Shown here: in pieces, positions 31,401 through 64,000 of the stretch
Position numbering within the stretch: the stretch's first letter is position 1
Layout of the letters: each line of letters starts with the position of its first letter
Virus record (IMG/VR): IMGVR_UViG_3300035698_035366
Location: 1-64,000 of that record
Strand: one strand, 5' to 3'
Length of the DNA: 64,000 nucleotides
Notes under the pieces: generated by a model
The model's input: only the letters and a program-made list of their open reading frames with translations
Told to the model about the DNA's origin: nothing
The model's database searches: none
Translations under genes and position numbers: made by a program

Positions 31401-34400
31401 CTTCACGCAATAACTGCCATTCTTGGTGGATATTAATATCAGGATCTGAAATTTCCCAATTAACCTGAACAACACTATCAATATCTTCTAGAAGTGGTCC
31501 TGAATTAGAATAAATCAATGCGTTGGTTGCAATAGGAGAGAACCATAAAATACCAGCACTTGTCGGGTTTTCAAGTATCTGCCTAACCTGGATAGCGTTA
31601 ATTGAACGGAAATCATAAGCTGGTGTTTGATCAGTATCTTCAACCCAGAAGAAGAATACAGTCTTAAAGTCACCAATTGCTTGATCGAATTCCTGTTTTT
31701 CTACCCAAGATGGATTATCGGGATCTTTAACAGTTCCAGAATAAGTTCCTTCAGAATCTATTTTGGGTTGATCAATAACTGTTTGATAAGAAAGGGGCTC
31801 AACTGGAGATTTAGTCCATTCGTAGATTTTGATCTCTGCACCTGGTGCTAGTTTACCCCAATTTTGTCTACGGTATTCTCGGCTTCCCTGTTCATAATCA
31901 AGGTATAATGATTTACTCGTGTCCCACCACAGTCTAGCAACGGCGGCATCACCCCATGCCAATTTTTCATTAATTGTGTCCAGTTCCGGATCACCGTCAG
32001 TATAGATGGCTGGATCATAATCAATGTGGTAATAAATTTCCTCATCTGCTACTCCAGGAACTAATCCCTTACGTGGATCATTAACATTAAATCTATTCTT
32101 CACTCTATTCGTATGTGCGTTATACAATACGGAGTTGGTTATACGACGGTTTGCTACACGGAGTTCTTGTTCTCGTTCAATGGTATCAGCATCAATATCA
32201 ACAACCACCCAATGCGGTTCGTCGTCAGCACCATTTGAAATATCATCAATCCATGCTTTTGTTAAACCAATTGGAGCATTAACCGCTGGATCAACATCAA
32301 AAACTGTTTTACTTGGAAAACGAACAGGGATAAGCTGGAGAAGAGTTGGAACAATAACGTCAGTATCAATTGGTAGTGCTGTATAATCAAACGGGGCTGA
32401 AGCAATTGTAGAAACAGTAAATTCGGTTGGGTCATTGATTGAAACTACCTCAATTATTCCTTGTAAACTATTTCCTGTTTCGTTGCTTGTATCATTGTCA
32501 ATTATAAACAAAGACCCAGCAACCATAAATTCTAAGTCATTATCAACTTTAATAATCGCCTGGTCACCATCAGTAACCGTTTCAATTTGGCTACTAGTAT
32601 CAATTACTTGGTAAACTTGGAACTCATCAGCGAAGTCCTGATAAACCCAAATATGATCACCCGGCTCAATAGGATTACCATTATCTATAGCATTGAAATA
32701 CGTATCATTCAATACCGAACGGTCAAATGCAGTATAGTCAATATCAGCCAAGTTTACATAACCAGCTGAACGGTAATCACCCTTTTGATCTAAGTAGCTC
32801 GTACGCAATTCCCAAACATTATTAAAGTCAGCTGGTTTACGTTGCCATCTTGGACTCGAATCATCAATCTGTAATACATCATCGAATGGGAAATCATCTG
32901 TGTCGAAACCAGTTCCAAATTCAATTAACTGAGGATTGGTTTTGTGATCTTCCTTAAACATTTGGAATTCGATGCTTGGACGGATTTCTGTTCCGCCGAA
33001 ACGACCGATTCTAACTGCAAACTCTTCAAACACTGTAAATATTTGATTGTTTTGGCCAGTAGCCGCCTTTAAGAATTTATCCAAGCTTAGTCGAGTTCCC
33101 TTGGCTTGAATCATTCCTTGATAGAATTGGAAACTAGTATCAGGATCAATTAGAAGTTGACGAAAATAATCCCTAACTTGGTATCCAGTAATATGACGGG
33201 CGTGTTCACGTAGTGTTACGCGATCAACCGAGTCTTCGATATCAAAATAGTGCTCAAAATCAGTAACGGTTTTATCAAAGTTTTCATAAATGTTATCTGC
33301 TTGCACAATGAAACCAGCAGCATCTAACCGACCAGTCCAATTGTCAGTGATAACTGTGTTGAGCTTTAGACGCTGTTGTCTAACATTAAATACTGGATCA
33401 TAAATCAAATCATTGAATGCTGTTGTGTTGCTTAGAAGCAAAATATGCTCAAACTCTTTAACAAAGGTTCGGCATAAGAAAATACCAATTCCAGCATTAG
33501 GAGTAACCGTCATGGTGTCTTCAGAACGGACAACGGTTGTGTCTTGTGGTTCAATCCGCTGACCAGTTTTATTCAATAATGGGTAAGAACCGTTTACTAA
33601 GGTTTCAATATTTTGCGTAACGCCTTGCGGTGTTCTAAACTTTACAATATCTGATAATGGAGATAGCGCAATAAAGTTACCTTCTGCCCACTTAGTGAGT
33701 GTCCAGAACAAGAATTCCTTACCACTCTGTCTCCAATTATTGATTGTATTTGTGTCTTCATTGAATTTATCAAATATCCACCCCTCAGTTTTTAGATACC
33801 TTTCATAATTAATTAGGAATTGGTAAACATCCTGCTTTGACGTAAATTGTGTACCATAAGGAATTAATTCTGGTTGAGCATCTAAAATACCATCAGTGTA
33901 CTCAGTAACAACTACAGCATTATTTGCAACAGGTGAACCAATAAACCTCCAATTTCCTCTTTCAAAGTTTTCTGTTGATTGGTGAGCAATTGTGCATTCA
34001 AAGATGCTTGCTTGATACTGTATAATTATACCAACAGCATAAGAAGTATTTGTTTCCCAACGAGGACGTGGTTCCGGATCAGGTTCACCAACTCTAATTG
34101 AAACTTTGCGACCATTTGGATCATGTGGTAAAGTTTTGAACAATGGATTTAGTGAGTCGTAACCAAACACTTGCCATCCCTTGCCGTTCCAAGTAATAAT
34201 CACTCCGGAATAAACAAACTCCTGCAAAGAAGCTGATGAGTACAATTCAATTGGTGTGTCTTCTTGTGGTACGAGACCGAAGTTATCGGCAACAACAGTA
34301 ATATTTTCAGTCTCGGTGTAACCACCCATTTTATGACCAAGCTGGACATCAATTCCACGTAAAATATCACCAAAGTTTGTAGTAATATCTTGACCTTGGC

Positions 34401-37400
34401 TAACGACGCGATCACTAATCCACTGTTGTATACCACTACCAATATAACGTACATTGTTTACAACTTCTCCATGAACATTCAATTCACTATTTTGTGGACG
34501 GTTTTTGGTAATAGTGTTAACCCATTGTTCACGAGTAGTTCCAACAAATATTTCATCATATCGAGCTGGATCCCATGCAAATTCAATAAATCGGGCTGGT
34601 TTAATTAGATAACCAACCTGCGCAACAGCAAACGGATATGATTCAGAATTTCTCCAAACCGACTCGATTGGGCCGCCATCACCAAATTCCCAAGGACGTG
34701 AAGCATTGTCAATTGTTGGGGTTGATAAAACAATCCCTGCAGAAACTGGATTAAGAAGAGTTCCTGATGCGTCAACTGGTAAAATATTAGAAAGTCCTGG
34801 ACGGGCATAAATTGGATCAATTCCTTTACGTATTCCGTCTTTAATTTCACCATTTTCAATGTCAGTCCATAATGAACTGTTACCAGAAGTGTATGGTGAT
34901 GGACCATATTCTGCATCCCAATAAGAAGGTTTCTTGTCAAAACCAAGCATTTCCCAAGGATATAGATCGGGACGTTCAGTACCATAAACAAAACGATACA
35001 TTCCTCTCCAATAGCCTGGAACGGGTTTACCATTAAAGGTTTGGAGTCCTTTGTAATTATAAGTGAACGGTTCACCAGCAGTGGCTATAACGTTTTCTCT
35101 ATAATCAGCGTTATTTAAAATAGCCCATCGCTCAAACATAGGGCGGAATAATGTACTTACTTCATCTGGTGTATAATCAGTTTCTCTGAAGTAATTAGGA
35201 ACGAATTCGTCAATGTTAAAATCTCTAACATTTTCGCTGGTATACTTTGTATCAACCGAGGCATAAACCATATTTTCATATTGAAGTTGTGCCTGGTCTC
35301 GTGGATCAACGAGATCTAATGGATTGTTGGTTGGTAGAGTTGTTGATTCAGAAATAAGATAATACAATGACCCATCATGTCCACGTAGAACAGGTTGTGG
35401 GTTTGGTAATGTAGTATCCAAGAAAACTTCTGGTTCATAAACTGGAAAAACACCAAGAAATGATGGAGTAGCGGGGATTAAACTTCCTTCACTAATCATT
35501 CCCGAGTAATAGAATGGAAAGGTGTTTGTTTTTCCAACATTGATTTGGATGATCGCTTCATTGACCATTTGTGTAGGAGACAATGACGTGAGTTGTCCAG
35601 TCCTAAGCATCTGATCAACTTTACTAACAAATTTGTTTCTAAACCGTGTATATTCTCTTTCAACAAACCTCACAGCCTTCATATAATCTAAATTATCATC
35701 TGACGCTAAGAGCATTAATTTCAACATTGGTGCTTGGTGTTGCATAATTGAACGACCAAATGATAAATCTTGCGTAGTATCACGCCAATTGTTTAATCCA
35801 TAAGCCGTTCCTTGGAAATCTTCTTGGTTCTCGATAATTTCTCTAAAGTGGTTAAAGAATTCTGTCTGGGATACTTCTTGAATATCTTCATTATTTGGAT
35901 TAGCTACCAAATTCAATGGTATTTCATAATTTGCAACATCTTCATTTGTTGGTCGGAAATCCGGATTATGAGATCTAACTCTAACAACTGGTTCAAGTGT
36001 ACCTACGGAAGGAGTAATGCTTAGGATATTTCCAGAGATTGAAAATTCTGATTCATCTAATTGTCGACCAGCAGCCTGAACAATTAAATTTGGAACATCA
36101 CCTGGAACGTTGGCTGCTGGCTCCTGTGTAAGAGGAAACTCAGAGGTTGGAAACTTGGAAGCTTCAAACACGTCAATGATGTATTGCTTTGTTTTGTTGT
36201 TGATAAGGTTCCAGCTATTGGAATACAAATCGTCTTCTACTGTATCACCAATTTGACGGAAGAAGTAGTAACCAATTGTTTCACCAAAATCTGAGGAGAA
36301 TCGTTCAGTTGCTAGAGTGTTTTCAAAAACAATTTCACCAGTGTTGTTGAACGATAGTTTTAGACCGACGTTTGGATCAACTGGTTGGAAAGGACTTTGA
36401 TTTTCTTTATAGGTGAAAATGGTTGATCCTTGGAAATCTGAGCCAGGATAAACACCAACATCATTCAATTTCACATTATCAATATCGTAAAGCTGGAATT
36501 TTGGTGGATCATTCTTCCCCAATTTCCTAATTCCTGGGTTCCAATTTGTTCCATCAAATTCAACAACCGTTCCGCCGAATGTATTACCATATCGTATTCT
36601 GTAAACATCGTCTGATACTGCAAGATCTTTAACAAGAGTGAGTTCAATAATACCAGTTGTTTTAATACCAGATACTTCGTATATTCGATTGTTAACAGCA
36701 GGGTTGATATCACTTGTTACGAGAATCTTTAAACCATCACTAATAGCTATACCATTAAACTCATTTGTTCCGTCAACTGTTATTGCCTGTGTAACACCAT
36801 CAACTATATGACCAGCAATTCCATATTGACCATATGCTTTACCAATAATATTATTTGGATTGTCAAGTTGTGAACCTGGAAACCAAATAGTTTTTCCATT
36901 AAGCGCACCGAAGAAGTTAATCGATTCAGTATAAACAACATCAGCGGTATATGAAGGTACTCCGTAGTTGAATACTTCCAAGTCTCTTATAAATTCGATA
37001 ATTGGGCGTTTTGCTTGTAAAGAACTTGGGTCTTCTTCAATAACGGTGTTGGATATTTCAATAACATCTCTGTGATACCAATGATTACCAGTACTCCAAG
37101 GAGATCCTTCAATACTTCCACGCTCGATAAGAAAATATTCAGGTCCTGGTTCTTGATCGTTGTCAGAGGCTAGAATATCCCATAATGATGCGTCCCAACC
37201 ATCTTCGTCCCAACCGGAGAAGCTTCCTTCATCTGTTACTTCTAGAAGACGTATTCCTCTACCAACACCCTCAACACCATAAGTCTTACCATTGGTCAAG
37301 GCATTTGCATCATCGGTAATTGTTATTCTCAATCCAGAAGTAAGATCAATGGTGTTACCGTCAACGGTTACCGTCGCAGTAACTTGTCCAATAATATAAT

Positions 37401-37923
37401 TTTGAATATCTGTTGGTGAATCAACGACAATTGGGTTGGGTCCTTGGTCTAGCCAGAAATAATTACTAAATGATGCAAATTTATCTAGATCAATTGGTGG
37501 AGCCCATGAATAATATTCTTGCTCAAATAATCTATTATGATCATTAACAATACCGCCTTGAAAACGGAGGTGATTAAGGATATCTTCGTAAAACAGCGAG
37601 TTAGTCAAATTGTTATCAATATCACGCGATGTAAGGATTGGCGCTAATTGGTAATATTCACGTGGTTTTGTTTCTTCGGATAGATAAAACTCTCGAGTTG
37701 GTTCCCAGAAGAAAGTCTTTTCCCCTATAAAACCAGAAACTTTTCGGCTACGGTTAGGTTCAAATAGGTGATCAATTGTTGCACCAAAGAATTTCTTTAG
37801 TGCATCTGTTTGATTAATTACTGGTAGGAGACCAATCTGCTCACGTTTTGGTTGAACCGAACGCTCGTCGACTTGCTCTGGAACCGGGTTTCTTGGATCT
37901 TTGTTAATTTTCCGTACTGCCAT
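25498..37923 (-). CDS. Giant virion structural protein (probable baseplate wedge/fibre scaffold), 4141 aa
   Basis: 12.4-kb uninterrupted ORF directly downstream of the gp6-like gene; acidic, beta-rich, WDxxxWD motifs and internal repeats. Confidence 0.85.
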   Translation of the reverse strand: MAVRKINKDPRNPVPEQVDERSVQPKREQIGLLPVINQTDALKKFFGATIDHLFEPNRSRKVSGFIGEKTFFWEPTREFYLSEETKPREYYQLAPILTSRDIDNNLTNSLFYEDILNHLRFQGGIVNDHNRLFEQEYYSWAPPIDLDKFASFSNYFWLDQGPNPIVVDSPTDIQNYIIGQVTATVTVDGNTIDLTSGLRITITDDANALTNGKTYGVEGVGRGIRLLEVTDEGSFSGWDEDGWDASLWDILASDNDQEPGPEYFLIERGSIEGSPWSTGNHWYHRDVIEISNTVIEEDPSSLQAKRPIIEFIRDLEVFNYGVPSYTADVVYTESINFFGALNGKTIWFPGSQLDNPNNIIGKAYGQYGIAGHIVDGVTQAITVDGTNEFNGIAISDGLKILVTSDINPAVNNRIYEVSGIKTTGIIELTLVKDLAVSDDVYRIRYGNTFGGTVVEFDGTNWNPGIRKLGKNDPPKFQLYDIDNVKLNDVGVYPGSDFQGSTIFTYKENQSPFQPVDPNVGLKLSFNNTGEIVFENTLATERFSSDFGETIGYYFFRQIGDTVEDDLYSNSWNLINNKTKQYIIDVFEASKFPTSEFPLTQEPAANVPGDVPNLIVQAAGRQLDESEFSISGNILSITPSVGTLEPVVRVRSHNPDFRPTNEDVANYEIPLNLVANPNNEDIQEVSQTEFFNHFREIIENQEDFQGTAYGLNNWRDTTQDLSFGRSIMQHQAPMLKLMLLASDDNLDYMKAVRFVEREYTRFRNKFVSKVDQMLRTGQLTSLSPTQMVNEAIIQINVGKTNTFPFYYSGMISEGSLIPATPSFLGVFPVYEPEVFLDTTLPNPQPVLRGHDGSLYYLISESTTLPTNNPLDLVDPRDQAQLQYENMVYASVDTKYTSENVRDFNIDEFVPNYFRETDYTPDEVSTLFRPMFERWAILNNADYRENVIATAGEPFTYNYKGLQTFNGKPVPGYWRGMYRFVYGTERPDLYPWEMLGFDKKPSYWDAEYGPSPYTSGNSSLWTDIENGEIKDGIRKGIDPIYARPGLSNILPVDASGTLLNPVSAGIVLSTPTIDNASRPWEFGDGGPIESVWRNSESYPFAVAQVGYLIKPARFIEFAWDPARYDEIFVGTTREQWVNTITKNRPQNSELNVHGEVVNNVRYIGSGIQQWISDRVVSQGQDITTNFGDILRGIDVQLGHKMGGYTETENITVVADNFGLVPQEDTPIELYSSASLQEFVYSGVIITWNGKGWQVFGYDSLNPLFKTLPHDPNGRKVSIRVGEPDPEPRPRWETNTSYAVGIIIQYQASIFECTIAHQSTENFERGNWRFIGSPVANNAVVVTEYTDGILDAQPELIPYGTQFTSKQDVYQFLINYERYLKTEGWIFDKFNEDTNTINNWRQSGKEFLFWTLTKWAEGNFIALSPLSDIVKFRTPQGVTQNIETLVNGSYPLLNKTGQRIEPQDTTVVRSEDTMTVTPNAGIGIFLCRTFVKEFEHILLLSNTTAFNDLIYDPVFNVRQQRLKLNTVITDNWTGRLDAAGFIVQADNIYENFDKTVTDFEHYFDIEDSVDRVTLREHARHITGYQVRDYFRQLLIDPDTSFQFYQGMIQAKGTRLSLDKFLKAATGQNNQIFTVFEEFAVRIGRFGGTEIRPSIEFQMFKEDHKTNPQLIEFGTGFDTDDFPFDDVLQIDDSSPRWQRKPADFNNVWELRTSYLDQKGDYRSAGYVNLADIDYTAFDRSVLNDTYFNAIDNGNPIEPGDHIWVYQDFADEFQVYQVIDTSSQIETVTDGDQAIIKVDNDLEFMVAGSLFIIDNDTSNETGNSLQGIIEVVSINDPTEFTVSTIASAPFDYTALPIDTDVIVPTLLQLIPVRFPSKTVFDVDPAVNAPIGLTKAWIDDISNGADDEPHWVVVDIDADTIEREQELRVANRRITNSVLYNAHTNRVKNRFNVNDPRKGLVPGVADEEIYYHIDYDPAIYTDGDPELDTINEKLAWGDAAVARLWWDTSKSLYLDYEQGSREYRRQNWGKLAPGAEIKIYEWTKSPVEPLSYQTVIDQPKIDSEGTYSGTVKDPDNPSWVEKQEFDQAIGDFKTVFFFWVEDTDQTPAYDFRSINAIQVRQILENPTSAGILWFSPIATNALIYSNSGPLLEDIDSVVQVNWEISDPDINIHQEWQLLREDDPSSLIPNDIWIKMRDSIVGFDGISSDNLVPDPLLTETERYGTFIRPRQTWFRNLTKARTVFVDEVNRLLTAEPILLNRITADDNLFYVTPLPTTGFDYQVVDNAERDALIATIAIGEIVLVEATTENNNRWTRWEYTAVNTFTLIETQEVRLEDVWDYADYRGTELNNVSDTFTPTVVYADRIAFDNALAIDSVPLNTIVEITTDTNGKETWLIVADDGLKTTTTVFAEDVTFQLNDTFLAPEYQIFTNNLRNDILTPQEQNHLVFVMINFVHSEQNMVDWAFKTSYIIIRGLEEELKQTPILREDITQSIIEYIEEAKPYHTKIRDFRQDLVIPYDSNIDEALLHATDFDKPVYFDGTNFRVLDENIAEDFEVIQENSPWNEWYADLEEDGSYQRVRRLNSKIVFDRVKCTTNIPQSGTQVSKITLLSSALQIPTIGSFDLNQLTVKHNMVSVLNSRIISRVVRLTINEPVTSSYVGDFSTRRFAMPKQIVQLETLTVVLNGITIFKNGSQLSTNPDHRFAVTTDGLDILFNNAPATGLDLDITIDERFTDNDGNLTGAFVFIGTDQNPGDILNVKTLDFTGTADFDINKLTNFDTNINVSFGSKGAVHGVVDVEFEYIVTVDTFKFTSAEGLDAADRVALFYNAIDSEPQQLLTPLETKKRIKGEGFFGTDLVYNEIIRPEFRVNPIPGCDFRGTLVYGVSDPKWLEKITQTALPQQIIAAANINLRSEVMNASIKFGDNLLNLGLTYEDLTPGDGFAVTLTSAVNDFNGEEPLDIPIGTFVEDDVIYWNGIIDGDGDNGWLKLVNGNLGGVIQPFNTSAIAPIMNTEIDIDVIMNPDSNDFSELSPNQHNIVTDGTGFHRPYFASDHPEELVKVNVDSSVDIKVFYDGVPGSPIILVDRLRSNGTQKRYGLLQIPQSNAGIFVYADGVKLDQGDDYVVDWTTNEIVFEDTGGTPTIPVEGVILKISTFSHGGNRVAFSTVFEGGTDTFQLRTFFVKSSTLVFVDGEPLDPVDYVVFGDELSITTGPVPTDTRVFVVVYDTGVSETIEDNDPFTDTYVLDNPTGITEGQILVTVDSVPEPFTYTSLTGEVTLLTGIPTPGSSVRITVFNQISPSLVRTIVFAGDGTTPDTVVNGDSSLTVTLPIEQENSMPSHANMLVREDGLRLRPDRTFYQTLIPDQYLLVLDTEVDTTNGEVISLIRDGVEQTENVDYVNPSTRRGTLDTSVSMVQALSDIGLTVGDLNPGDYFTVTNLANTVITNDFQGGWGNEFSILPPDIESHVDVYDPTDLFTQSELLVEDCDDGLDGEFSYDPTTDIDSGRVYGLTTYLNRRDGIESGFSVATPTNAFNIVPVSFEEGQGILYIGNNTFSVLAADKFYRPETMDASITIADNLTNLGLTYDDLLIGDTFKVTTTVIDNFFGSLPLGSFIDGDVLYWNGPADGIDADGWRKTQNPLVPEREIHFVNPSAEENDIVFWLNDVDREYDADSTTVTILNPNPASEYQVTFFSIDDSLNIETHVYDESRDGIYQINNLPFDDSYIWFSVNGERKLYQRDYLITSAGTGWDTTPWDAGGDDDRREPVSNEGIIISDIIEVIEQYDFGIVSVVDDSEEDMEDGGGLFDEAQFDEFGNPSPTICDITYKEIQEVTKDNRGKLIPFPGSDGWDTVTSSSIIRTNPFVGTTADWLAKSKDDIVATIISGPPIQTPFAYRVFTGALGSKQFSRIADFFKLFVREEFTSTDVILKADVNPTFLESEFPIDYVYEPTASAPGVLYIGTERLEYSNVNGPLFDNTTGKRFYEFSGLNRATRLISPSPSYGIGTVIERAGPLEQISHVYEEVSPDPLISLGAEAILAESSSIDKIADGNTFVYALDIYPVERTITSVYLVDQSGSTEVLTPLINETDNKIYTINNITNVDNIILGSQIEFDVAPVADALRIIQVIPESLNLLNKQTRQINFLRKEAGTLD

Positions 37924-53495: not shown

Positions 53496-55748
53496 ATGTT
53501 AACGATCAAATCTATAACTATGAAAAATTTCCTGAGTGTAGGTAATGTTACGCAAGCAATCAATTTATCTGATAAAGGGTTGACACTTGTTCTAGGACAA
53601 AACATTGATCTTGGTACCGATGGTTCACGAAATGGTGTTGGTAAATCTACCATCATCCAAGCGTTATGTTATGGGTTATATGGTACTCCGTTAACAAATA
53701 TTAAAAAAGATAATTTAATCAACAAAACAAATGAAAAAAATATGTTTGTTACGGTTGAGTTTTCAAAGAATGACATTAACTATAAAATTGAACGCGGTCG
53801 GAAACCAAACACGATACGATTTCTAGTTAATGATAAACAATTCAATACCGATGAAGAAGGTGATGATGAAGCACATGGCGACATGCGGGTTACACAGTTG
53901 CATATCAATAGTATTCTTGGCCTATCACGAGAAATGTTTAAACATATTTTCGCTCTAAATACGGTTACTGAACCTTTCCTTGCGCTTGGTGCTCACCCAC
54001 AAAGACAAATTATCGAAGAACTACTTGGTGTTACCCAATTATCTGAAAAGGGTGAAAAACTAAAAGAACTGAATCGGACAACAAAGGAATCAATTACGTC
54101 TGAAGAATTTCGTATCAAATCTATGCAAGAAGCTAATAGCACTATTCAATCAAATATTAATAATTTAAAGACTAGAGCAAGTGGTTGGAAAGTAAAGCAT
54201 AAGAAGGATATTAATGATGTGATCAATGCGTTAGATCAATTGTCTCATGTTTCAATCGACGATGAAATTTCTATCCATAAAGCGTTAATTGTTGTCAAGG
54301 AATTAACAACAGAAAAAGATACCATTCAATCAAATATTAATAACCTGAAGAATAGATCAAATAGTTGGGGATTGAAACATGAGAAGGACATTAACGATGT
54401 GATTAATACATTAGATCAATTGTCTCATGTTTCAATCGATGATGAAATCTCTATTCATAAATCTTTAATTGTTGCTGAAGGATTAAGAACGGAAAAAGAT
54501 ACTATTGATATAAAATTGAAGACAGAGAATAAAAATAAAACGAGAATTGAAAAACAAATAAGTAGCTATAAAACACAGATTAGTGGTATAGACAGGCAAA
54601 TTGAAACAACCAACGAGCAATTGAAGAAAGCAGAAGAGCACGGTTGCCCAACTTGTGGTCAGGAATTGCATGACGAAAAACATGAGGAAATTGTAAATTC
54701 TATTAAAAATACTTTAGACGACCTTACACAGCAAATAACTGAATTAAACAATGATATTAATGAGTTAGAAACATCTTTGTTGGAAATAGTTAAAACAATC
54801 GACGGTATAAACGCCAATATCGAAGCAGTTGAAAAAAGTATAGAAGAAATGGGAGAAATTTCTACTCCATTCTATTCGGATATTGAGGAAGCATACAATC
54901 ATCGCGGCTCCTTTGAAAGTTTACAACGTGAGAAAGAGCGCATCGAGAGTGAAATTAATCCTTTCGATGAACAAATTGAACACTTTAATGTCAATTTCGA
55001 ATCGGTTGAAAAAAGTATAGAAGAAATGGGAGAAATATCAACTCCGTTCTATTCAGATATTGAGGAAGCCTATAATCACCGTAGCTCTTTAGAAGAATTA
55101 AAGCGTGAGAAAGACCGCATTGAGGGTGAAATTAACCCTTTCGATGAACAAATTGAACAACTTACGGAAAATGGTTTACAGGAAGTTTCATATGATCAAT
55201 TGAATTCGCTCACCACACAACGGGAACATCAAGAATTTCTTATCAAACTCCTCCTCAATAAGGACTCATTTATTCGAAAGAAAATCATTGAACAAAACCT
55301 TGCGTACCTTAATCATCGACTGAACAGTTACCTAGATAAACTCGGCTTGCCACATGAAGTTATTTTCCGCAATGATCTTTCTGTAGAAATTACTGAACTT
55401 GGTAGGGATTTTGATTTTGATAATTTAAGCCGCGGTGAAAGAAACCGTTTGATACTTGGACTTAGCTTTAGTTTTCGAGATGTTTGGGAAAGTTTGAACA
55501 TGAGCTGCAATCTAATGTTCATTGACGAACTAATTGATTCCGGAATGGATCCAGTCGGGGTTGAAAATTCTCTAAGTGTATTGAAAAGTATGGGAAGAGA
55601 TCAAGGCAAGGACGTATTCCTTATCAGTCACAAGGAAGAGCTATTATCAAGAGTAAGCCGAGTCATGTTGGTGAAGAAAGAAGGCGGGTTCACTAACTTC
55701 GTTGAGGACGTTGAGGATATTGAAGAAGTTGAAATAGATTTAGATTAA
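53496..55748 (+). CDS. Recombination ATPase subunit, gp46/SbcC/Rad50-like, 750 aa
   Basis: KNFLSVGN, Walker A GSRNGVGKST, zinc hook CPTC, signature LSRGE, Walker B FIDELID, FLISH. Confidence 0.93.
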   Translation: MLTIKSITMKNFLSVGNVTQAINLSDKGLTLVLGQNIDLGTDGSRNGVGKSTIIQALCYGLYGTPLTNIKKDNLINKTNEKNMFVTVEFSKNDINYKIERGRKPNTIRFLVNDKQFNTDEEGDDEAHGDMRVTQLHINSILGLSREMFKHIFALNTVTEPFLALGAHPQRQIIEELLGVTQLSEKGEKLKELNRTTKESITSEEFRIKSMQEANSTIQSNINNLKTRASGWKVKHKKDINDVINALDQLSHVSIDDEISIHKALIVVKELTTEKDTIQSNINNLKNRSNSWGLKHEKDINDVINTLDQLSHVSIDDEISIHKSLIVAEGLRTEKDTIDIKLKTENKNKTRIEKQISSYKTQISGIDRQIETTNEQLKKAEEHGCPTCGQELHDEKHEEIVNSIKNTLDDLTQQITELNNDINELETSLLEIVKTIDGINANIEAVEKSIEEMGEISTPFYSDIEEAYNHRGSFESLQREKERIESEINPFDEQIEHFNVNFESVEKSIEEMGEISTPFYSDIEEAYNHRSSLEELKREKDRIEGEINPFDEQIEQLTENGLQEVSYDQLNSLTTQREHQEFLIKLLLNKDSFIRKKIIEQNLAYLNHRLNSYLDKLGLPHEVIFRNDLSVEITELGRDFDFDNLSRGERNRLILGLSFSFRDVWESLNMSCNLMFIDELIDSGMDPVGVENSLSVLKSMGRDQGKDVFLISHKEELLSRVSRVMLVKKEGGFTNFVEDVEDIEEVEIDLD
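54141..54500 (+). repeat. In-frame tandem duplication, 2 x 180 bp (60 aa), in the gp46 N-terminal coil
   Basis: Units start ACTATTCAATCAAATATTAATAA (54141) and ACCATTCAATCAAATATTAATAA (54321). Confidence 0.92.
54816..55160 (+). repeat. In-frame tandem duplication, 2 x 177 bp (59 aa), in the gp46 C-terminal coil
   Basis: GTTGAAAAAAGTATAGAAGAAATGGGAGAAAT at 54828 and 55005. Confidence 0.92.
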
Positions 55749-57429: not shown

Positions 57430-58317
57430 ATGGCGCAAGCTAATTGGCAAAAGTCAATGAGTAATACTATGATTACTGAACGGACCGGAGACCGTCAACG
57501 GTTCCAACCACAAACAATTGACATAACGTTAGAAGAACGAGATTATACAAGGCTTCGACAGTATATCCAAGCCGAGACAGGTTTTTATAACGCTATTAAT
57601 AACATATTCGCTCCCAAATTGCGAGGGTTCCCGCATGAATTGGTTGAGCTTGACGAAAGATTTGAAAAATTGTTTATCGATCTTTCTTATACTGGTTTCA
57701 ATTTGCGAGATGTCATTTACAGAAACAAAGAAACTGCTGAACTACCAGATGAACTAGAAAAACATAGAGATTTTATTTACGGAAAAAATAGTACCGGAAA
57801 TAGATTAGTTACTGAATCATTTGTTATTATGACTGAAGAATTTGGAAAAGGTCATTTTGTTCATCCGTTGGTTAAAAAAAGAATGGCAACGGAAATGTTT
57901 AGGTTTTACGTTAAACAAGCTAAAAATATTATGCAAACTGTTCGAAACCGAGAAGGTGAACTCGAACTCCGTGACACTGGTGAACTACTTGAACCAATGG
58001 ATACCATTAGAAAACGACATCTACAAATACCTAGAGAAATCGTAGATATTAAATGGGACAAAGATAAAGAAGAAACAATAATCACCAACCCATTTTGTTC
58101 ACCTATTAAATTTAGACATAATAATATACTAGCTGATAAGGGATGGAATCTTATGATTCTGCACCAAGAGCCTGGAAAAATGGCTTTAGGATTTACTCCA
58201 TGGGTGATAGATATTCGACATTCAAAGGCATTATACTTACTCAAATATGTTGATGTACGTTCTCCTAACGGAGGAGGAGCATTTTTTACTGCAAAATCCG
58301 GTGCAGGAAAGCATTAA
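57430..58317 (+). CDS. Hypothetical protein, 295 aa; tentative TnpB/Cas12f WED-REC-like protein without RuvC
   Basis: AAGGAG RBS before ATG 57430, so the CDS itself is secure. The TnpB resemblance is by-eye only (see findings); confidence refers to that call. Confidence 0.4.
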   Translation: MAQANWQKSMSNTMITERTGDRQRFQPQTIDITLEERDYTRLRQYIQAETGFYNAINNIFAPKLRGFPHELVELDERFEKLFIDLSYTGFNLRDVIYRNKETAELPDELEKHRDFIYGKNSTGNRLVTESFVIMTEEFGKGHFVHPLVKKRMATEMFRFYVKQAKNIMQTVRNREGELELRDTGELLEPMDTIRKRHLQIPREIVDIKWDKDKEETIITNPFCSPIKFRHNNILADKGWNLMILHQEPGKMALGFTPWVIDIRHSKALYLLKYVDVRSPNGGGAFFTAKSGAGKH

Positions 58318-58362
58318 AAATCAATTGTTTAATAAGCTAGAAAATTAATTACTATATACTTA

Positions 58363-58430
58363 TAGGCATATCATTTAGGCACACTAATCAACTACCGATC
58401 AACTACTAATCATAGGCACATTTTAGGCAC
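58363..58430 (+). repeat. Cluster of short direct repeats: 4 x TAGGCA and 2 x ATCAACTAC
   Basis: TAGGCA at 58363, 58376, 58413, 58424; ATCAACTAC at 58387 and 58398. Confidence 0.75.
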
Positions 58431-58451
58431 CAGCCATAATATCAAGTCGTG

Positions 58452-58483
58452 AAAAAAGCGACCCGAAAGTCGCTTTCTATTTT
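58452..58483. terminator. Bidirectional intrinsic terminator
   Basis: AAAGCGAC-CCGAAA-GTCGCTTT stem with a U-rich tract on both strands (TTTCTATTTT plus; TTTTTT minus). Confidence 0.7.
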
Positions 58484-58539
58484 GATTGTGTGTAATTTTT
58501 ACACCAATCAAAAAACCACAACGTTATATGACACTTCGC

Positions 58540-59070
58540 AGCGTCACAAGTATTTAGCATACTTGTTATTTGCAGACTCGGAAATAAGAGACCTGAGAAG
58601 TGACTACGTCGCTAGAGCATAGTGACTGATCCCCCTCATTGCGGTTGTGGGCAGTGATAGGGCCAGGAAAGTCATCGAAACCCTGGGAAGGATAGAAGAT
58701 AGGAACGCTGCCTGTCGCTATTGTTCGAGAATCTAAGCCTGTGCTAAGGTCAACTGCTGACTATGTGCCGCTTAGTACAAATCCAGAGTCCAGACTAAAA
58801 ATCTGGAACGTTTCCCTCTATTGGTCGCTGATATGAGCTGATAGAATGGCCGAAGCTGTAGGTTAAATCAAACCTCAGACCGTCGTGTTGGATAGAGTAA
58901 AATTCGGGAGGCTGCATCGTAGTTCGAAAGAAGTAAGGTTGTAATGGCACACCTGGTGACCGTAAGATGCACATGTCAGAAGAATATTCTATTTTTTATC
59001 TATTTTTTTCTCCACCTTTTGGGGGCGGGGGAGGAAGAGTCTGAAAAGAATTAGGATAAGAAAAGAATTA
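58540..59070 (+). ncRNA. Candidate large structured non-coding RNA, family not recognised
   Basis: No ORF in the track; GC-richer than flanks; at least 7 helices found by eye, several with G-U pairs that favour the plus strand; GAAA-capped stem; purine-rich linkers. Confidence 0.5.
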
Positions 59071-59310
59071 AAACACTTCGTGTTTACCAATGGGGATGAT
59101 TAAAGGAAGCAAGCCGTGCTTGCTTCTAATTTAGCAGTAATATCATTCGCGTAGCTCATGCAATTACTGCTAAATTGGTTTACTTATTAATTAATTCGTT
59201 TAATTATATGATAATTTGTAACTATATAAAATGATTATAGTATTCTTTAATGAAACGTTAGTGCAATGCTAAGAATACTATAATCCGTTTGAAGCGAAGC
59301 TTCTAACGTA
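59071..59310. other. Cluster of perfect inverted repeats / DNA hairpins (possible origin or ssDNA signal)
   Basis: Stems of 6, 9, 14, 15 and 5 bp; GCGAAGC at 59294, GCGTAGC at 59149, C-GAA-G triloop on the minus strand at 59071-59085. Confidence 0.6.
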
Positions 59311-59372
59311 ATAGTTATATAAAAAATCATAAAAAAGCGTTTCACTATGTTGGAGGAGGTTCTGAGTAGAAT

Positions 59373-59567
59373 TTATATTAACGGCATACTAGAATTTTTA
59401 GTATTTTCAATATTTTCTTCAATTATGTGGTGTATGATCTTTCTTTCCTTATAACTTAATCTCCAACCATCCTCTCTAGATATGGAGCCACGCATGTACC
59501 AACAGATATGATAGATCGTATCCATCAACTGCATTTCTTCATTCTCCATTTGCTTTAATAAGTCCAA
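59373..59567 (-). CDS. Tail/baseplate assembly chaperone C-terminal ORF (gp51-like or GT-type frameshift extension)
   Basis: ICWYMRGSISREDGWRLSYKERKII motif; TTG start only; frame is open back to the slippery site at 59609-59603. Confidence 0.7.
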   Translation of the reverse strand: MDLLKQMENEEMQLMDTIYHICWYMRGSISREDGWRLSYKERKIIHHIIEENIENTKNSSMPLI

Positions 59568-59599: not shown

Positions 59600-60574
59600 T
59601 TATAAAAAATTTGCAGGATTAAACTCTAATGGTATATCCCATTTATGTCCACATTTTCTACATACAACTTCATGCTCTGTTGGTACAGTTTTAATTCCTG
59701 TAACACTATCAACTTTATCCTGTATTACCTTTTGATCCCTAGCTGGTAATGATACCATAAACTCATTGATAAAATCTCGATTTGTTATTTCTTGACCATC
59801 TGGCATAATAATGTGAGTAATTGATTTAGCAGCCAAATTAAGTTTAACATCATTAAGTCTGTCAATTGTATCACCGAACGCTTTAATTGAACTGATATCT
59901 TCACCCTTATCTTCTAACAATTTGAAATGTTCGATTTTCTTTGATTCTTGGAATGCGATTTGTTGAGCAATAAAGATATTTTCTAGATCATATTGTTTAA
60001 CAAATACGTTTAAGTCTTTCATTTGTACAGAATATGGTGGATCCAATGGTTCAATTCCTGACATTAAATTGCGTATATCAATTTGGTATGAATTTTCTGC
60101 TTCACAGTCTGGACATTTTGTTTGAATTTCGTAATCATCTCCGTAAGTAACTGCACGAATCGCCATCATAATTATATCAATATCAGCTTGAACTAAACTT
60201 CGTGTATGAATAATACAAGGAACGCAACTCTTAATTGCATTTTCTGTTGCTCGTCCACTCATAATAGCATCAGGGTTCTTAAATAATAATTCATCCGCGG
60301 CAGTCATTGGAAAAATTTCAACTTCACCTGAAATCGTTAAATCGATATCACTATCGGCATACCATACAAGTTGACTTGGTAATTTAATAGTCATTCCTGG
60401 CGCTCTAAAATAGCTACTTAAAGGATTACCTGGCTTTGTTGGTGTTGCTTTTGTTTCTGGGGCTCTTGTGGATGGATTATTAATGTTTTGAGTCTTGGGT
60501 TCTTCCCAATCGTCATCTAATTGTTTTATATTACCCATATGTGGCATTTGTGTTGGATCAAATTCGTTGCTCAT
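59600..60574 (-). CDS. Baseplate hub / tail assembly chaperone (gp26-like), 324 aa
   Basis: NPLSSYFRAP, IKLPS, PMTAADELLFKNPDA, DIDIIMMAIRAVTYG, CPDC and CRKC Zn-binding pairs, EFNPANF end. Confidence 0.8.
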   Translation of the reverse strand: MSNEFDPTQMPHMGNIKQLDDDWEEPKTQNINNPSTRAPETKATPTKPGNPLSSYFRAPGMTIKLPSQLVWYADSDIDLTISGEVEIFPMTAADELLFKNPDAIMSGRATENAIKSCVPCIIHTRSLVQADIDIIMMAIRAVTYGDDYEIQTKCPDCEAENSYQIDIRNLMSGIEPLDPPYSVQMKDLNVFVKQYDLENIFIAQQIAFQESKKIEHFKLLEDKGEDISSIKAFGDTIDRLNDVKLNLAAKSITHIIMPDGQEITNRDFINEFMVSLPARDQKVIQDKVDSVTGIKTVPTEHEVVCRKCGHKWDIPLEFNPANFL

Positions 60575-63042: not shown

Positions 63043-64000
63043 ATGAGCTGGAAAAAACATTTGGCTGCCGTACCACAAGGGCAAAAACTCCAAGCTGCAA
63101 TTGATAGAATGCACGCTAATATGGATAATGAAGCCATTACTGGTACGAGTGGTAAATTTACTTCTTATCTACCAGAAGTTTATTCTGGGCAAGATAACCG
63201 TATTGAAAGATACGGTCAATATTTGAACATGGATAAAGATCCAGCCGTCAATGCTGCATTGGATACCATTTCATATTTCTGTACACAAACTGAAGAAGAA
63301 TCACCTTTGATGTTCAAAATTGATTACTTTGATAATGTCACTGATGCGGAAACAGAAGTGTTACAAGCTTCCCTTAGAAAATGGACATTAATCAATAAAT
63401 TCAAACAACGACTATTTGGTATTTTCAGAAAAACTATTATGTATGGTGATCAATTCTTTATTCGCGACCCAGAAACATTTGAACTGCATTGGGTCAATCA
63501 CGAAAATGTTGATAAGATAATTGTAGATGAGGCACAAGGAAAGAAACTTGATCAATTCATAGTTAGGGATTTGGATTTGAATCTGCAGACATTAGTAGCA
63601 ACTCAGCCTAGAAAAGGACGTGGTTCACAAGGACCAACAGGGTGGGCTGGAACGCCTAAGGCCGCTGGACCAGTCACTGTTCCATCATCAGCAGGTGGTT
63701 ATGGTACAAGGTTTGATACTGGTCAAGGTGAATATATTGATGCAAATCATGTTGTTCAATTCTCTCTTTCAGATGGACAAGACGCAAATTGGCCGTTTGG
63801 TTCTTCAATTTTGGAATCAGTTTTCAAACCATACAAGCAGAAAGAATTAATTGAAGATGCGGTTATCATTTATCGAGTTCAAAGAGCACCTGAACGTAGA
63901 GTATTTTATATTGATACTGGTAATGCACCCCCACATAAGGCTATGGAGTTCGTTAATCGAATTTCAAATGAAATACACCAACGACGTATACCAACACAGA
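63043..64000 (+). CDS. Portal vertex protein, T4 gp20-like, partial (runs off the window)
   Basis: Manual translation from ATG 63043: MSWKKHL...RIERYGQYLNMDKDPAVNAALD...YGDQFF...SILESVFKPYKQKELIEDAVIIYRVQRAPERRVFYIDTGN; no stop before 64000. Confidence 0.92.
   Translation, partial: MSWKKHLAAVPQGQKLQAAIDRMHANMDNEAITGTSGKFTSYLPEVYSGQDNRIERYGQYLNMDKDPAVNAALDTISYFCTQTEEESPLMFKIDYFDNVTDAETEVLQASLRKWTLINKFKQRLFGIFRKTIMYGDQFFIRDPETFELHWVNHENVDKIIVDEAQGKKLDQFIVRDLDLNLQTLVATQPRKGRGSQGPTGWAGTPKAAGPVTVPSSAGGYGTRFDTGQGEYIDANHVVQFSLSDGQDANWPFGSSILESVFKPYKQKELIEDAVIIYRVQRAPERRVFYIDTGNAPPHKAMEFVNRISNEIHQRRIPTQ

What the first reader, a model, noticed from the sequence alone, without database searches (positions are those of the whole stretch)
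59071..59310. Array of long perfect hairpins with GNA-triloop minihairpins on both strands
Seen within 240 bp: AAACAC-TTC-GTGTTT (59071-85; GAA loop on the minus strand); GAAGCAAGC-CGT-GCTTGCTTC (59106-26); a 14-bp IR AATTTAGCAGTAAT/ATTACTGCTAAATT (59128-41/59163-76) enclosing GCGTAGC; a 15-bp IR GATTATAGTATTCTT/AAGAATACTATAATC (59233-47/59271-85); and GAAGC-GAA-GCTTC (59291-303) containing GCGAAGC. Known: GCGNAGC forms unusually stable DNA minihairpins, and GNA-type DNA hairpins occur in phage origins and N4 promoters. The perfect Watson-Crick arms, unlike the G-U helices upstream, point to DNA-level (cruciform or ssDNA) function. Inference: replication origin, packaging signal or priming site.
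Basis: partly seen in the sequence, partly recalled or inferred. Interest (0 to 1): 0.6.

Follow-up and report, generated by a model that had tools for sequence, protein, structure and literature searches.

The report
Conserved hairpin array beside phage RNA gene
The hairpins are real and are kept by matching mutations in related giant phages, but they are the tail of a conserved 1-kb non-coding locus that encodes a large structured RNA (EGFOA-like) just after a nuclease-less TnpB/Cas12f-like gene, so they are not shown to be a stand-alone replication origin.

Summary
**Observation:** confirmed. All five hairpins sit at the stated coordinates. The 296-kb phage record has nine perfect hairpins of 12 bp or more (0-3 in shuffles), and two of the three longest lie here.

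**Conservation:** seven syntenic relatives (flanking protein 78% to about 31% identical) keep the same architecture. Hairpins B, D and E, or equivalents, occur in six of them. Stems change by paired substitutions (B: 8 of 9 pairs) and stay almost purely Watson-Crick.

- The array ends a 1.05-1.2-kb gene-free gap.
- Its core (58405-59050) is 90-100% identical in a relative whose flanking coding DNA is about 75% identical.
- The core holds an EGFOA (RF02955) match on the + strand in every EGFOA-bearing relative. The window scores 20 bits; relatives reach 40.1 against a gathering score of 37.7.
- A long hairpin that is more stable on the + strand follows the core.
- The 295-aa gene just upstream folds like the WED-REC lobe of TnpB/Cas12f/Fanzor (Z about 10) and has no RuvC domain.

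**Best reading (0.45):** the hairpins are the 3' module of this + strand RNA locus.

**Main rival (0.3):** DNA-level hairpins. The near-absence of G-U pairs and C-GRA-G tips on either strand keep this open.

**Rejected:** terminators, N4-type promoters and a CRISPR array. No read data could be obtained.

The parts
57430..58317 (+). Gene for a 295-aa protein (P0004) with the fold of the WED-REC (RNA- and target-binding) lobe of TnpB/Cas12f/Fanzor. It has no RuvC or TNB nuclease lobe. It always lies directly upstream of the non-coding gap.
   Evidence: - AF2 model: pLDDT 87, pTM 0.82.
- Foldseek against PDB: top ~35 matches are nearly all Cas12f/n/p/k, TnpB and CasLambda, probability 0.99-1.0 for the best.
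- VIA-align: Z 9.5-10.7, model residues 24-265 on TnpB residues 1-174 and AsCas12f 1-208.
- Profile against PDB sequences: best hit Fanzor 1, E 0.008.
- No PF07282 or PF01385 match anywhere in the record.
- Same gene order in all ten distinct syntenic loci fetched.
58363..58430 (+). Four direct copies of TAGGCA(C/T), starting at 58363, 58376, 58413 and 58424, just upstream of the conserved core. The last pair, 11 nt apart, is conserved as ATAG(G/A)CAC...(T/C)AGG in relatives. Possibly a promoter, operator or 5' element.
   Evidence: TAGGCAC occurs only 5 times on the + strand of the 296-kb record, 3 of them here. Alignment. A sigma-70-like TAGGCA-16-CATAAT match was listed; the -10 part is not conserved.
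58455..58476 (+). Stem-loop AAAGCGAC-CCGAAA-GTCGCTTT followed by CTATTTTGAT. It is either the terminator of the upstream gene or the 5' hairpin of the RNA. Relatives have a hairpin at this place without a U tract.
58405..59050 (+). Highly conserved structured core of the non-coding locus, taken to be a large + strand RNA.
   Evidence: 90-100% identity to the nearest relative in 100-nt windows, where flanking coding DNA is about 75% and the hairpin array 54-73%. Shared sequence blocks with the distant clade. The 841-nt + strand stretch 58500-59340 folds with z = -6.4.
58869..58973 (+). EGFOA-like domain (Rfam RF02955). The match covers the full model but scores below the gathering threshold in this window.
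   Evidence: Scores at the homologous position, + strand only: window 20.3 bits, L016 25.3, L017 31.9, L019 32.1, L018 36.0, L029 37.1, L030 38.0, L027 40.1. Gathering score 37.7.
58986..59057 (+). Long U-rich/G-rich hairpin with many U-G pairs, more stable on the + strand. It is present in all eight sequences and is not followed by a U tract.
   Evidence: Folds. The + strand is more stable than the - strand in 8 of 8 sequences, by 1.3 to 14.5 kcal/mol.
59071..59085 (.). Hairpin A: AAACAC-TTC-GTGTTT.
   Evidence: The nearest relative has AGCAC-TTC-GTGCT, an A-T to G-C double change. The xAC-TTC-GTx minihairpin recurs in L017 and L027.
59106..59126 (.). Hairpin B: 9-bp stem with a 3-nt loop.
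   Evidence: Present in 6 of 6 aligned sequences. 8 of 9 pairs change on both sides, none on one side only, and 98% of cells are paired (alignment A3).
59128..59176 (.). Hairpin C: 14-bp stem with a 21-nt loop holding a conserved sequence (59143-59159, TCATTCGCGTAGCTCAT) and the GCGTAGC minihairpin (59149-59155).
   Evidence: The nearest relative has a different but again perfect 14-bp stem (5 pairs changed), while the loop is nearly identical. The distant clade has a stem that also encloses a triloop minihairpin.
59177..59232 (.). AT-rich spacer between hairpins C and D. It contains the best sigma-70-like match of the region on the - strand (59230 to 59203).
   Evidence: The AT-rich character is only partly conserved.
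59233..59285 (.). Hairpin D: 15-bp stem (20 bp at 90% over 59228-59290) with a 23-nt loop.
   Evidence: The nearest relative keeps it with an A-T to G-C double change and one G-A mismatch. The distant clade has a 14-bp stem with conserved bulges and an inner GNRA-type (GCAA, GUAA) or GUAU hairpin on the + strand.
59286..59308 (.). Hairpin E: core GAAGC-GAA-GCTTC (59291-59303, with GCGAAGC at 59294-59300), extendable to 10 pairs with one T-T mismatch.
   Evidence: Seven sequences (six distinct): 5 of 10 pairs change on both sides, with one U-G (alignment A4).
59373..59549 (-). Conserved small ORF (58 aa) that ends the convergent baseplate-hub operon. In the distant clade an RNase H gene on the + strand lies between the array and this ORF.
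59600..60574 (-). Baseplate hub gene (PF12322), the right-hand syntenic anchor.

Best explanation
The hairpin array is the downstream module of a conserved non-coding locus of about 0.95 kb (roughly 58360-59310). The locus occurs in one lineage of uncultivated T4-like giant phages.

**Order of the locus:**
- a short repeat or promoter-like element;
- a ~570-650-nt structured core containing an EGFOA-type domain;
- a long hairpin that is more stable on the + strand;
- four to six stem-loops.

It lies immediately 3' of, and on the same strand as, a gene for a nuclease-less TnpB/Cas12f-like (WED-REC only) protein.

**Most likely mechanism.** The + strand is transcribed from about 58.4 kb through the core. 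The hairpins are helices of the 3' extension of that RNA. They could serve as protective or processing structures, or as arms of a larger RNA or RNP assembly.

**Shown:**
- the hairpins and their statistical excess;
- their conservation by compensatory change;
- their fixed linkage to the core whatever gene follows;
- the EGFOA-like domain and its strand;
- the fold of the neighbouring protein.

**Inferred:**
- that the transcript runs into the array;
- that the protein binds this RNA;
- what the RNA or RNP does.
For: 1. Hairpins B, D and E, or equivalents, are kept in six relatives whose flanking protein is 78% to about 31% identical, with many double changes. The eighth sequence, L030, has its own hairpin array.
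2. The array stays attached to the core whether the next gene is a convergent small ORF (window, nearest relative) or a co-oriented RNase H gene (L017-L019, L027, L029) or a 104-aa ORF followed by RNase H (L030).
3. EGFOA matches sit at the homologous place and on the + strand in all eight gaps, above the gathering score in L027 and L030.
4. The long hairpin between core and array is more stable on the + strand in 8 of 8 sequences. No intrinsic terminator was listed anywhere between the 58698-58716 candidate and the end of the array.
5. RNA-style features occur inside the array. The loop of hairpin C is conserved while its stem is replaced. Hairpin D carries conserved bulges in the distant clade. 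GNRA tetraloops GCAA and GUAA appear on the + strand in L018, L019 and the nearest relative.
6. The upstream protein has the RNA- and target-binding lobe of TnpB/Cas12f. Known relatives of that fold work with an RNA encoded just downstream (PMC13622181).
7. EGFOA RNAs are described as putative small RNAs in unusually large gene-free intergenic regions (bioRxiv 10.64898/2026.07.01.735769).
Against:
- Array stems almost lack G-U pairs. Hairpins B and E have one U-G and one C-A in 114 cells, and no pair varies on one side only. Core helices carry conserved G-U pairs.
- Hairpin tips are C-GRA-G on the - strand in some hairpins and on the + strand in others. That is strand-symmetric and fits DNA better than one RNA.
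- Overall folding energy of the array is the same on both strands.
- The window's own EGFOA score (20.3 bits) is well below threshold.
- A sister lineage (L043) has the same protein and 5' module but neither an EGFOA core nor this array.
- No guide-like match to the phage's own genome was found.
Confidence: 0.45

Rival explanations
1. The hairpins act at the DNA level. They would form as cruciforms, or as hairpins in single-stranded DNA exposed by transcription or replication. Possible roles are a replication-origin or priming module, a stabiliser of an R-loop made by the adjacent RNA (as at ColE1 or the T4 oriF/oriG origins), or a landing site for a structure-specific protein.
For: - Stems are almost purely Watson-Crick across clades, with no one-sided changes.
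- C-GRA-G tips, the very stable DNA minihairpin type, appear on either strand. 13 of 23 perfect triloop hairpins in the eight arrays are of this kind, against about 6% expected by chance (minihairpin background from PMC13037366).
- Folding energy is symmetric between strands.
- There is an AT-rich 56-nt spacer inside the array and a cluster of TAGGCAC direct repeats upstream.
- The locus sits between recombination genes (Mre11, Rad50, a PDDEXK nuclease) and, in most relatives, an RNase H gene.
Against: - No positive sign of an origin: GC skew tracks gene strand only.
- The long loops of C and D (21-23 nt) disfavour cruciform extrusion (established knowledge).
- The conserved loop sequence, conserved bulges and + strand GNRA loops look RNA-like.
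- This phage record has no RNase H match.
- Perfect stems can also come from template-switch mutation in palindromes (my own knowledge).
Confidence: 0.3
2. The hairpins are transcription stops or barriers that separate the + strand RNA gene from the convergent baseplate-hub operon. They would act as bidirectional terminators or as blocks to 3' exonucleases.
For: In the window the array lies between convergent units. Perfect stems would fold in transcripts of both strands.
Against: - None of the hairpins is followed by a U tract on either strand, and the terminator scan lists none in 59071-59310.
- In six relatives the next gene (RNase H, or a 104-aa ORF followed by RNase H in L030) is co-oriented, so there is no convergence to insulate.
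Confidence: 0.08
3. The hairpins are N4-type hairpin promoters, or another single-stranded-DNA promoter or priming signal, read by a phage-encoded single-subunit polymerase.
For: Hairpin E (GAAGC-GAA-GCTTC) carries the GC-rich heptamer with a G-R-A loop that N4 virion RNA polymerase promoters show (PMC4496689). Many tips in relatives are C-GRA-G.
Against: - Loop sequences are not conserved at homologous hairpins (E: GAA, GTAA, TAC, AAG, AAT).
- Stems of 9-15 bp exceed the 5-7 bp of N4 promoters.
- No conserved -17 to +1 sequence is present.
- The three largest ORFs of the window show no polymerase domain.
- Syntenic cultured relatives carry a T4-like late sigma factor gene in this neighbourhood (annotations), and PA5oct relies on host RNA polymerase (PMC7318152).
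Confidence: 0.03
4. The inverted repeats have no function. They are created and kept perfect by template-switch replication errors, or they are relics of IS200/IS605-type transposon ends that came with the TnpB-like gene.
For: Multi-nucleotide paired changes such as GC to CT with GC to AG in hairpin C are what a single template-switch event gives. TnpB genes come from transposons whose ends carry DNA hairpins (background in PMC13622181).
Against: Hairpins sit at homologous positions in lineages whose flanking proteins are only about 31-33% identical, and the locus is fixed in a core-genome position. Neutral palindromes would not last that long. The locus shows no transposase-like ORF and no repeated copies elsewhere in the record.
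Confidence: 0.06

Closest known systems
EGFOA RNA motif (Rfam RF02955)
   Same: - Full-length matches on the + strand at the same place in all eight syntenic gaps, above the gathering score in L027 (40.1) and L030 (38.0).
- Shared blocks ACCGUCnUGUU, a CGAAAG hairpin and UAAnGGCAnACCU.
- Like described EGFOA RNAs, it sits in an unusually large gene-free intergenic region of a phage.
- A canonical 68.9-bit copy in IMG/VR contigs lies in an ~800-nt gap upstream of the terminase and portal genes.
   Different: - The window's copy scores only 20.3 bits.
- The domain (~105 nt) is embedded in a ~650-nt conserved core and followed by a long hairpin and the hairpin array.
- The canonical locus L025 shows no such perfect hairpins.
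- The function of EGFOA is unknown. Only in-vitro oligomers are reported (bioRxiv 10.64898/2026.07.01.735769).
TnpB-omegaRNA, Cas12f-sgRNA and TldR-gRNA systems
   Same: A small protein with the WED-REC lobe of this superfamily (Z about 10) is followed on the same strand by a conserved structured RNA gene. That is the layout of TnpB and TldR loci (PMC13622181).
   Different: - The protein lacks the whole RuvC/TNB lobe, whereas TldRs keep a degenerate RuvC domain.
- The RNA is several times longer than known scaffolds (97-250 nt).
- No guide segment or target was identified.
- The locus is fixed in the core genome of giant phages and is not mobile.
- Binding of protein to RNA is not shown.
GCGNAGC DNA minihairpins and N4 virion-RNA-polymerase hairpin promoters
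   Same: The window holds GCGTAGC and GCGAAGC. C-GRA-G triloop tips are strongly over-represented in the arrays of all relatives.
   Different: The tips are not conserved at homologous hairpins and lie on either strand. Stems are longer than in N4 promoters. There is no conserved flanking promoter sequence and no sign of an N4-type polymerase (PMC4496689).
R-loop origins (ColE1 RNA II with RNase H; T4 oriF/oriG)
   Same: A long structured transcript is followed by an AT-rich stretch and DNA hairpins, with an RNase H gene next door in most relatives and recombination genes upstream.
   Different: This is analogy only. No origin activity, R-loop or skew signal was shown. This phage record has no RNase H match.

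Membership tests
EGFOA RNA (RF02955) | Covariance-model score at or above the gathering score (37.7 bits) | tested here: not met
   Window 58869-58973, + strand: 20.3 bits, full model 1-108.
EGFOA RNA (RF02955) | Homology by position to sequences that pass the threshold | tested here: met
   The same place and strand in syntenic gaps scores 40.1 (L027), 38.0 (L030-32), 37.1, 36.0, 32.1, 31.9 and 25.3 bits. Alignment across clades.
TnpB/Cas12f/Fanzor superfamily (neighbouring protein) | WED plus REC lobe fold | tested here: met
   Z 9.5-10.7 over model residues 24-265 against TnpB 1-174 and Cas12f 1-208; 41 chains with Z of 8 or more, all of the listed ones from this superfamily. Foldseek probability 0.99-1.0 for the best matches. 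Fanzor 1 at E 0.008 by sequence profile.
TnpB/Cas12f/Fanzor superfamily (neighbouring protein) | RuvC nuclease lobe with D-E-D triad and TNB zinc finger | tested here: not met
   The protein ends about 30 residues after the WED-REC lobe. No PF07282 or PF01385 match in six frames of the record.
TnpB/TldR-type guide RNA | Scaffold followed by a guide that matches a DNA target next to a TAM | tested here: inconclusive
   No match longer than chance between the gap and the rest of the 296-kb record. The host genome is unknown.
Intrinsic terminator | G+C-rich stem followed by a U tract | tested here: not met
   The scan lists none in 59071-59310, and the flanks are not U-rich on either strand.
N4-type hairpin promoter | 5-7-bp stem, G-R-A loop on the template strand, conserved -17 to +1 sequence, cognate virion polymerase | tested here: not met
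   Loops vary at homologous hairpins. Stems are 9-15 bp. The window's giant ORFs have no polymerase domain. Defining features taken from PMC4496689.
CRISPR array | Direct repeats of one sequence separated by spacers | tested here: not met
   The hairpins differ in sequence. The only direct repeat is one 22-nt pair at 77% identity.
Replication origin | Initiation of DNA synthesis; strand-bias switch; unwinding element; initiator sites | not testable with these tools
   GC skew follows gene orientation. An AT-rich spacer and TAGGCAC repeats are present but non-specific. Read data were unavailable.
GCGNAGC DNA minihairpin | Sequence GCGNAGC | tested here: met
   GCGTAGC at 59149-59155 and GCGAAGC at 59294-59300. 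Neither is conserved in the nearest relative.

The most novel reading that the evidence does not exclude
A lineage of giant T4-like phages carries, in a fixed core-genome position, a domesticated RNA-guided module. It would consist of a TnpB-derived protein reduced to its RNA- and target-binding lobe, a very large EGFOA-containing RNA, and in most members an RNase H gene. In this reading the strictly Watson-Crick hairpin array is the DNA-level part of the device. One possibility is that the RNP forms an R-loop there, RNase H trims the RNA to prime replication, and the displaced strand folds into the hairpins. This would give EGFOA RNAs their first function and would be a new use of the TnpB scaffold.
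Probability: 0.15. Interest if true: 0.9.

Novelty: new variant of a known kind. Interest (0 to 1): 0.62.

Why it matters
EGFOA RNAs have no known function, and their gene context has hardly been described. Here an EGFOA-type domain is part of a much larger conserved RNA locus. The locus has a fixed place in giant-phage genomes, a conserved hairpin array, and a neighbouring protein that is the RNA-binding half of TnpB/Cas12f without any nuclease.

If the protein and RNA work together, this would be a new kind of domesticated RNA-guided, or at least RNA-scaffolded, system in phages. It would also give a concrete handle for testing what EGFOA RNAs do.

The contrast between G-U-bearing core helices and strictly Watson-Crick downstream hairpins offers a testable boundary between RNA-level and DNA-level constraint within one locus.

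Tried and rejected
**Searches that found nothing**
- Rfam at gathering thresholds on the window and on relatives L016-L018: no hit.
- tRNA and tmRNA scan: none.
- blastn of the window gap and of the L017 gap against 50,697 phage records: no match.
- tblastn of the 295-aa protein and of P0033 against the same records: no match.
- IMG/VR scans: the hairpin-C loop gave only chance coding hits; two core patterns gave nothing.
- JGI metagenome scan: only the window's own contig.
- The search for related loci with the hub protein and with the 295-aa alignment: nothing.
- nhmmer of the core against the syntenic regions of PA5oct and Atu_ph07: nothing. The four PA5oct ncRNAs lie elsewhere (PMC7318152).
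- The 295-aa family was not found in the two short canonical EGFOA contigs, which are 20-31% complete, so this is uninformative.
- A Mycobacterium MAG pattern hit (L026) did not reach the EGFOA threshold.
- PHROGs and Pfam gave nothing for the 295-aa protein, the 58-aa ORF or other neighbours.

- The supplement of the paper that defined EGFOA is not held.

**Analyses that did not discriminate**
- Whole-segment folding energy and G-U fractions from single-sequence folds did not separate the strands for the core. Only the long hairpin and the EGFOA model give the strand.
- Pairs predicted on both strands gave a weak 8:2 excess of + strand G-U in the core.
- GC skew was uninformative.
- The guide-target search within the phage gave only chance 14-15-mers.

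**Other**
- The sister lineage L043 proved to have a different gap, so it was of no use for covariation.
- Readings considered and rejected: terminators, N4 promoters, a CRISPR array and a REP-like repeat family.
Full report
**1. What the window is.**
The window is the first 64 kb of a 296,119-bp IMG/VR virus record. It carries a T4-type portal, a baseplate hub and a Rad50-like gene. Syntenic relatives place an Mre11-type phosphoesterase gene (Metallophos) just upstream of Rad50. The hub protein is only about 31% identical to those of Atu_ph07, PA5oct and the Rak2-like jumbo phages. This is therefore an uncultivated giant T4-like phage. Identical copies of the region occur in several metagenome assemblies, on contigs up to 408 kb.

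**2. The observation.**
Every hairpin is at the stated place.
- The whole record has nine perfect hairpins with a stem of 12 bp or more and a loop of 3-40 nt. Six block shuffles gave 0-3.
- The 14-bp and 15-bp ones here are two of the three longest, and they lie 160 nt apart.
- They sit in a 1,055-nt gene-free gap between a + strand gene ending at 58317 and a - strand small ORF ending at 59373.

**3. Relatives.**
Exact-protein look-ups of homologues of the two flanking genes gave seven further distinct sequences with the same gene order. That order is Mre11, Rad50, a few small genes, a PDDEXK nuclease on the - strand, the 275-295-aa gene, a 1.05-1.2-kb gap, then the small ORF, hub and portal.
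- The nearest relative is on two Logan contigs of one run (L016 and L007). They overlap by 18 nt at a 21-nt tandem duplication, and I joined them in a script.
- L017, L018, L019, L027 and L029 form a second clade. L030 (identical in the gap to L031 and L032) forms a third.
- In the second and third clades an RNase H gene on the + strand lies between the gap and the small ORF. In L030 a 104-aa ORF comes first.
- No relative exists in GenBank phages or IMG/VR.

**4. The gap is a conserved element, and the hairpins are its tail.**
Against the nearest relative, 100-nt windows between 58418 and 59065 score 82-100% identity, mostly 90% or more. The flanking coding DNA is about 75% identical (flanking proteins 71% and 78%), and the hairpin region is 54-73%. 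The core can be aligned to the distant clades through shared blocks.

The hairpins evolve fast in sequence but keep their pairing.
- **Hairpin C** has five changed pairs in the nearest relative and is again a perfect 14-bp stem. Its loop TCATTCGC(G/A)TAGCTCAT is almost unchanged.
- **Hairpin B** (six sequences) has 8 of 9 pairs changed on both sides, none on one side only, and 98% of cells paired. No shuffle, and no slid register, comes close.
- **Hairpin E** (seven sequences) has 5 of 10 pairs changed on both sides and one U-G.
- **Hairpin D** is kept in the nearest relative. In the second clade it is a 14-bp stem with conserved bulges.

**5. What the core is.**
- Rfam at gathering thresholds finds nothing in the window.
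- At relaxed thresholds the EGFOA model (RF02955, gathering score 37.7) matches full-length, on the + strand, at the homologous place in every gap.
- The scores are: window 58869-58973 at 20.3 bits, L016 25.3, L017 31.9, L019 32.1, L018 36.0, L029 37.1, L030 38.0 and L027 40.1.
- Two relatives thus pass Rfam's own threshold, and the window's copy is a divergent homologue.
- A pattern taken from the EGFOA consensus found canonical copies (68.9 bits) in two IMG/VR phage contigs. There the RNA lies in an ~800-nt gene-free region just upstream of the terminase large subunit and portal genes.
- A 2026 preprint describes the family as putative small RNAs in unusually large intergenic regions. It shows that they form trimers, hexamers or strand-swapped dimers in vitro (bioRxiv 10.64898/2026.07.01.735769). 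Their function is unknown.
- Downstream of the EGFOA-like domain, a long U-rich/G-rich hairpin (58986-59057) is more stable on the + strand than on the - strand in all eight sequences.
- The EGFOA matches and this hairpin together set the strand of the RNA as +.

**6. The neighbouring protein.**
The 295-aa product (57430-58317) has no Pfam or PHROG match. A profile search found 57 homologues, many on contigs of 0.2-1 Mb.
- An AlphaFold2 model built from 45 of them is confident (pLDDT 87, pTM 0.82).
- Its Foldseek matches in the PDB are almost all Cas12f, Cas12n, Cas12p, Cas12k, CasLambda and TnpB.
- VIA-align gives Z 9.5-10.7 over model residues 24-265. These align with residues 1-174 of ISDra2 TnpB and 1-208 of AsCas12f, which is the WED-REC lobe. 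Mimivirus Fanzor2 also scores Z 10.0.
- A sequence profile search of the PDB has Fanzor 1 as its best hit, at E 0.008.
- There is no room for a RuvC/TNB lobe, and neither domain is found anywhere in the record.
- Known nuclease-dead relatives (TldRs) keep a degenerate RuvC domain and work with a guide RNA encoded next to the gene (PMC13622181).

Same-strand adjacency of this protein gene and a large structured RNA gene, in every locus examined, suggests an RNA-protein pair. Binding is not shown. I found no guide-like match to the phage's own genome. In a sister lineage (L043) the protein and the first ~250 nt of the gap are kept, but the rest of the gap is different and has no EGFOA match.

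**7. RNA or DNA for the hairpins?**

*For RNA:*
- The array stays physically linked to the core whatever gene follows.
- The scan lists no terminator between the 58698-58716 candidate and the end of the array.
- The loop of hairpin C is conserved while its stem covaries.
- Hairpin D carries conserved bulges in the second clade.
- GNRA tetraloops (GCAA, GUAA) lie on the + strand in some members.

*For DNA, or for a constraint on both strands:*
- The conserved stems are almost free of wobble pairs, and no pair varies on one side only. Core helices carry conserved G-U pairs.
- Of the 23 perfect triloop hairpins in the eight arrays, nearly all are closed by C-G.
- Thirteen of them have TTC or TCC on the + strand (GAA or GGA on the - strand), or GAA or GGA on the + strand. 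About 6% would be expected by chance. C-GRA-G is the very stable DNA minihairpin type (PMC13037366, PMC4496689), and here it appears on either strand.
- The array folds equally well on both strands.

*Caveats:*
- The sequences are few and related, so these counts are not independent events.
- Template-switch mutation can make and keep perfect palindromes without selection against G-U (my own knowledge of the literature).

I therefore rank the RNA-module reading first (0.45) and a DNA-level role second (0.3).

**8. Readings rejected.**
- **Intrinsic or bidirectional terminators.** No U tracts follow the hairpins on either strand, and in six relatives the next gene is co-oriented.
- **N4-type hairpin promoters.**
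  - Loops differ at homologous hairpins, stems are too long, and there is no conserved flanking sequence.
  - The window's giant ORFs show no polymerase domain.
  - Syntenic cultured relatives carry a T4-type late sigma factor gene nearby (PMC4496689).
- **CRISPR array or repeat family.** The hairpins are unrelated in sequence and are unique in the record.
- **Origin of replication.** This is not excluded, but nothing positive supports it. GC skew follows gene strand, and no read data could be obtained.

**9. Verdict.**
Structure-level selection and the Watson-Crick-only pattern are real, but the proposed functions remain untested.

I found no description of this combination in the searchable literature. 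I rate it a new variant of known kinds (EGFOA RNA; TnpB-derived proteins), with moderately high interest.

Noticed in passing
window 58363-58430: Four direct copies of TAGGCA(C/T) within 68 bp. The motif occurs only 5 times on the + strand of the whole 296-kb record. The pair 11 nt apart is conserved in relatives as ATAG(G/A)CAC...(T/C)AGG. It could be a promoter or operator, an iteron, or the 5' end of the RNA.
   Followed up: partly
L016:7630-7667 and L007:6431-6465 (nearest relative): Between hairpins A and B the relative carries a 21-nt tandem duplication (GTGCTAACTAATGGGGTGATT twice). The assembly breaks into two contigs at that point. The window has a single copy (59080-59101).
   Followed up: partly
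L043:3429-4708 (also L044-L046): A sister lineage keeps the TnpB-like protein and the first ~250 nt of the gap. After that it has a different, shorter non-coding stretch without an EGFOA match, and an extra 157-aa ORF before RNase H.
   Followed up: partly
L025:11850-12640 (IMG/VR contig): A canonical EGFOA RNA (68.9 bits) lies in an ~800-nt gene-free region directly upstream of terminase large-subunit and SU10-type portal genes. This hints that EGFOA RNAs are phage RNAs placed near morphogenesis or packaging genes.
   Followed up: partly
window 63043-64000 and beyond (L003:1-1532): The portal gene product is 1,000 aa in the source assemblies, with a weak intein-splicing hit between two Portal_T4 segments. 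The portal may be interrupted by an intein.
   Followed up: no
window 25498-37923 (- strand): A 4,141-aa ORF whose only Pfam hit is a weak, below-cutoff carbohydrate-binding module (CBM_5_12). A 1,144-aa ORF follows it. They may be giant structural or fibre proteins.
   Followed up: partly
window 1-3978 (- strand): A protein of more than 1,326 aa with an Mtd_N (major tropism determinant N-terminal) domain plus Laminin_G_3, SPRY and DUF7483 domains. It is a receptor-binding-type protein and might be a target of a diversity-generating retroelement.
   Followed up: no
window 54370-54437: A perfect 15-bp inverted repeat with a 38-nt loop lies inside the Rad50-like coding sequence. It is the only other stem of this length in the record.
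   Followed up: no
window 58836-58842 and 59153-59159: The conserved loop of hairpin C (AGCTCAT) is complementary to ATGAGCT in the core. Both are unchanged in the nearest relative. This may be a long-range pairing, but a 7-mer match has a chance of a few percent.
   Followed up: no
window 59122-59143 and 59299-59320: The 3' arm of hairpin B plus the start of C resembles the 3' arm of hairpin E plus its downstream flank (22 nt, 77% identity). This hints at an old duplication inside the array.
   Followed up: no
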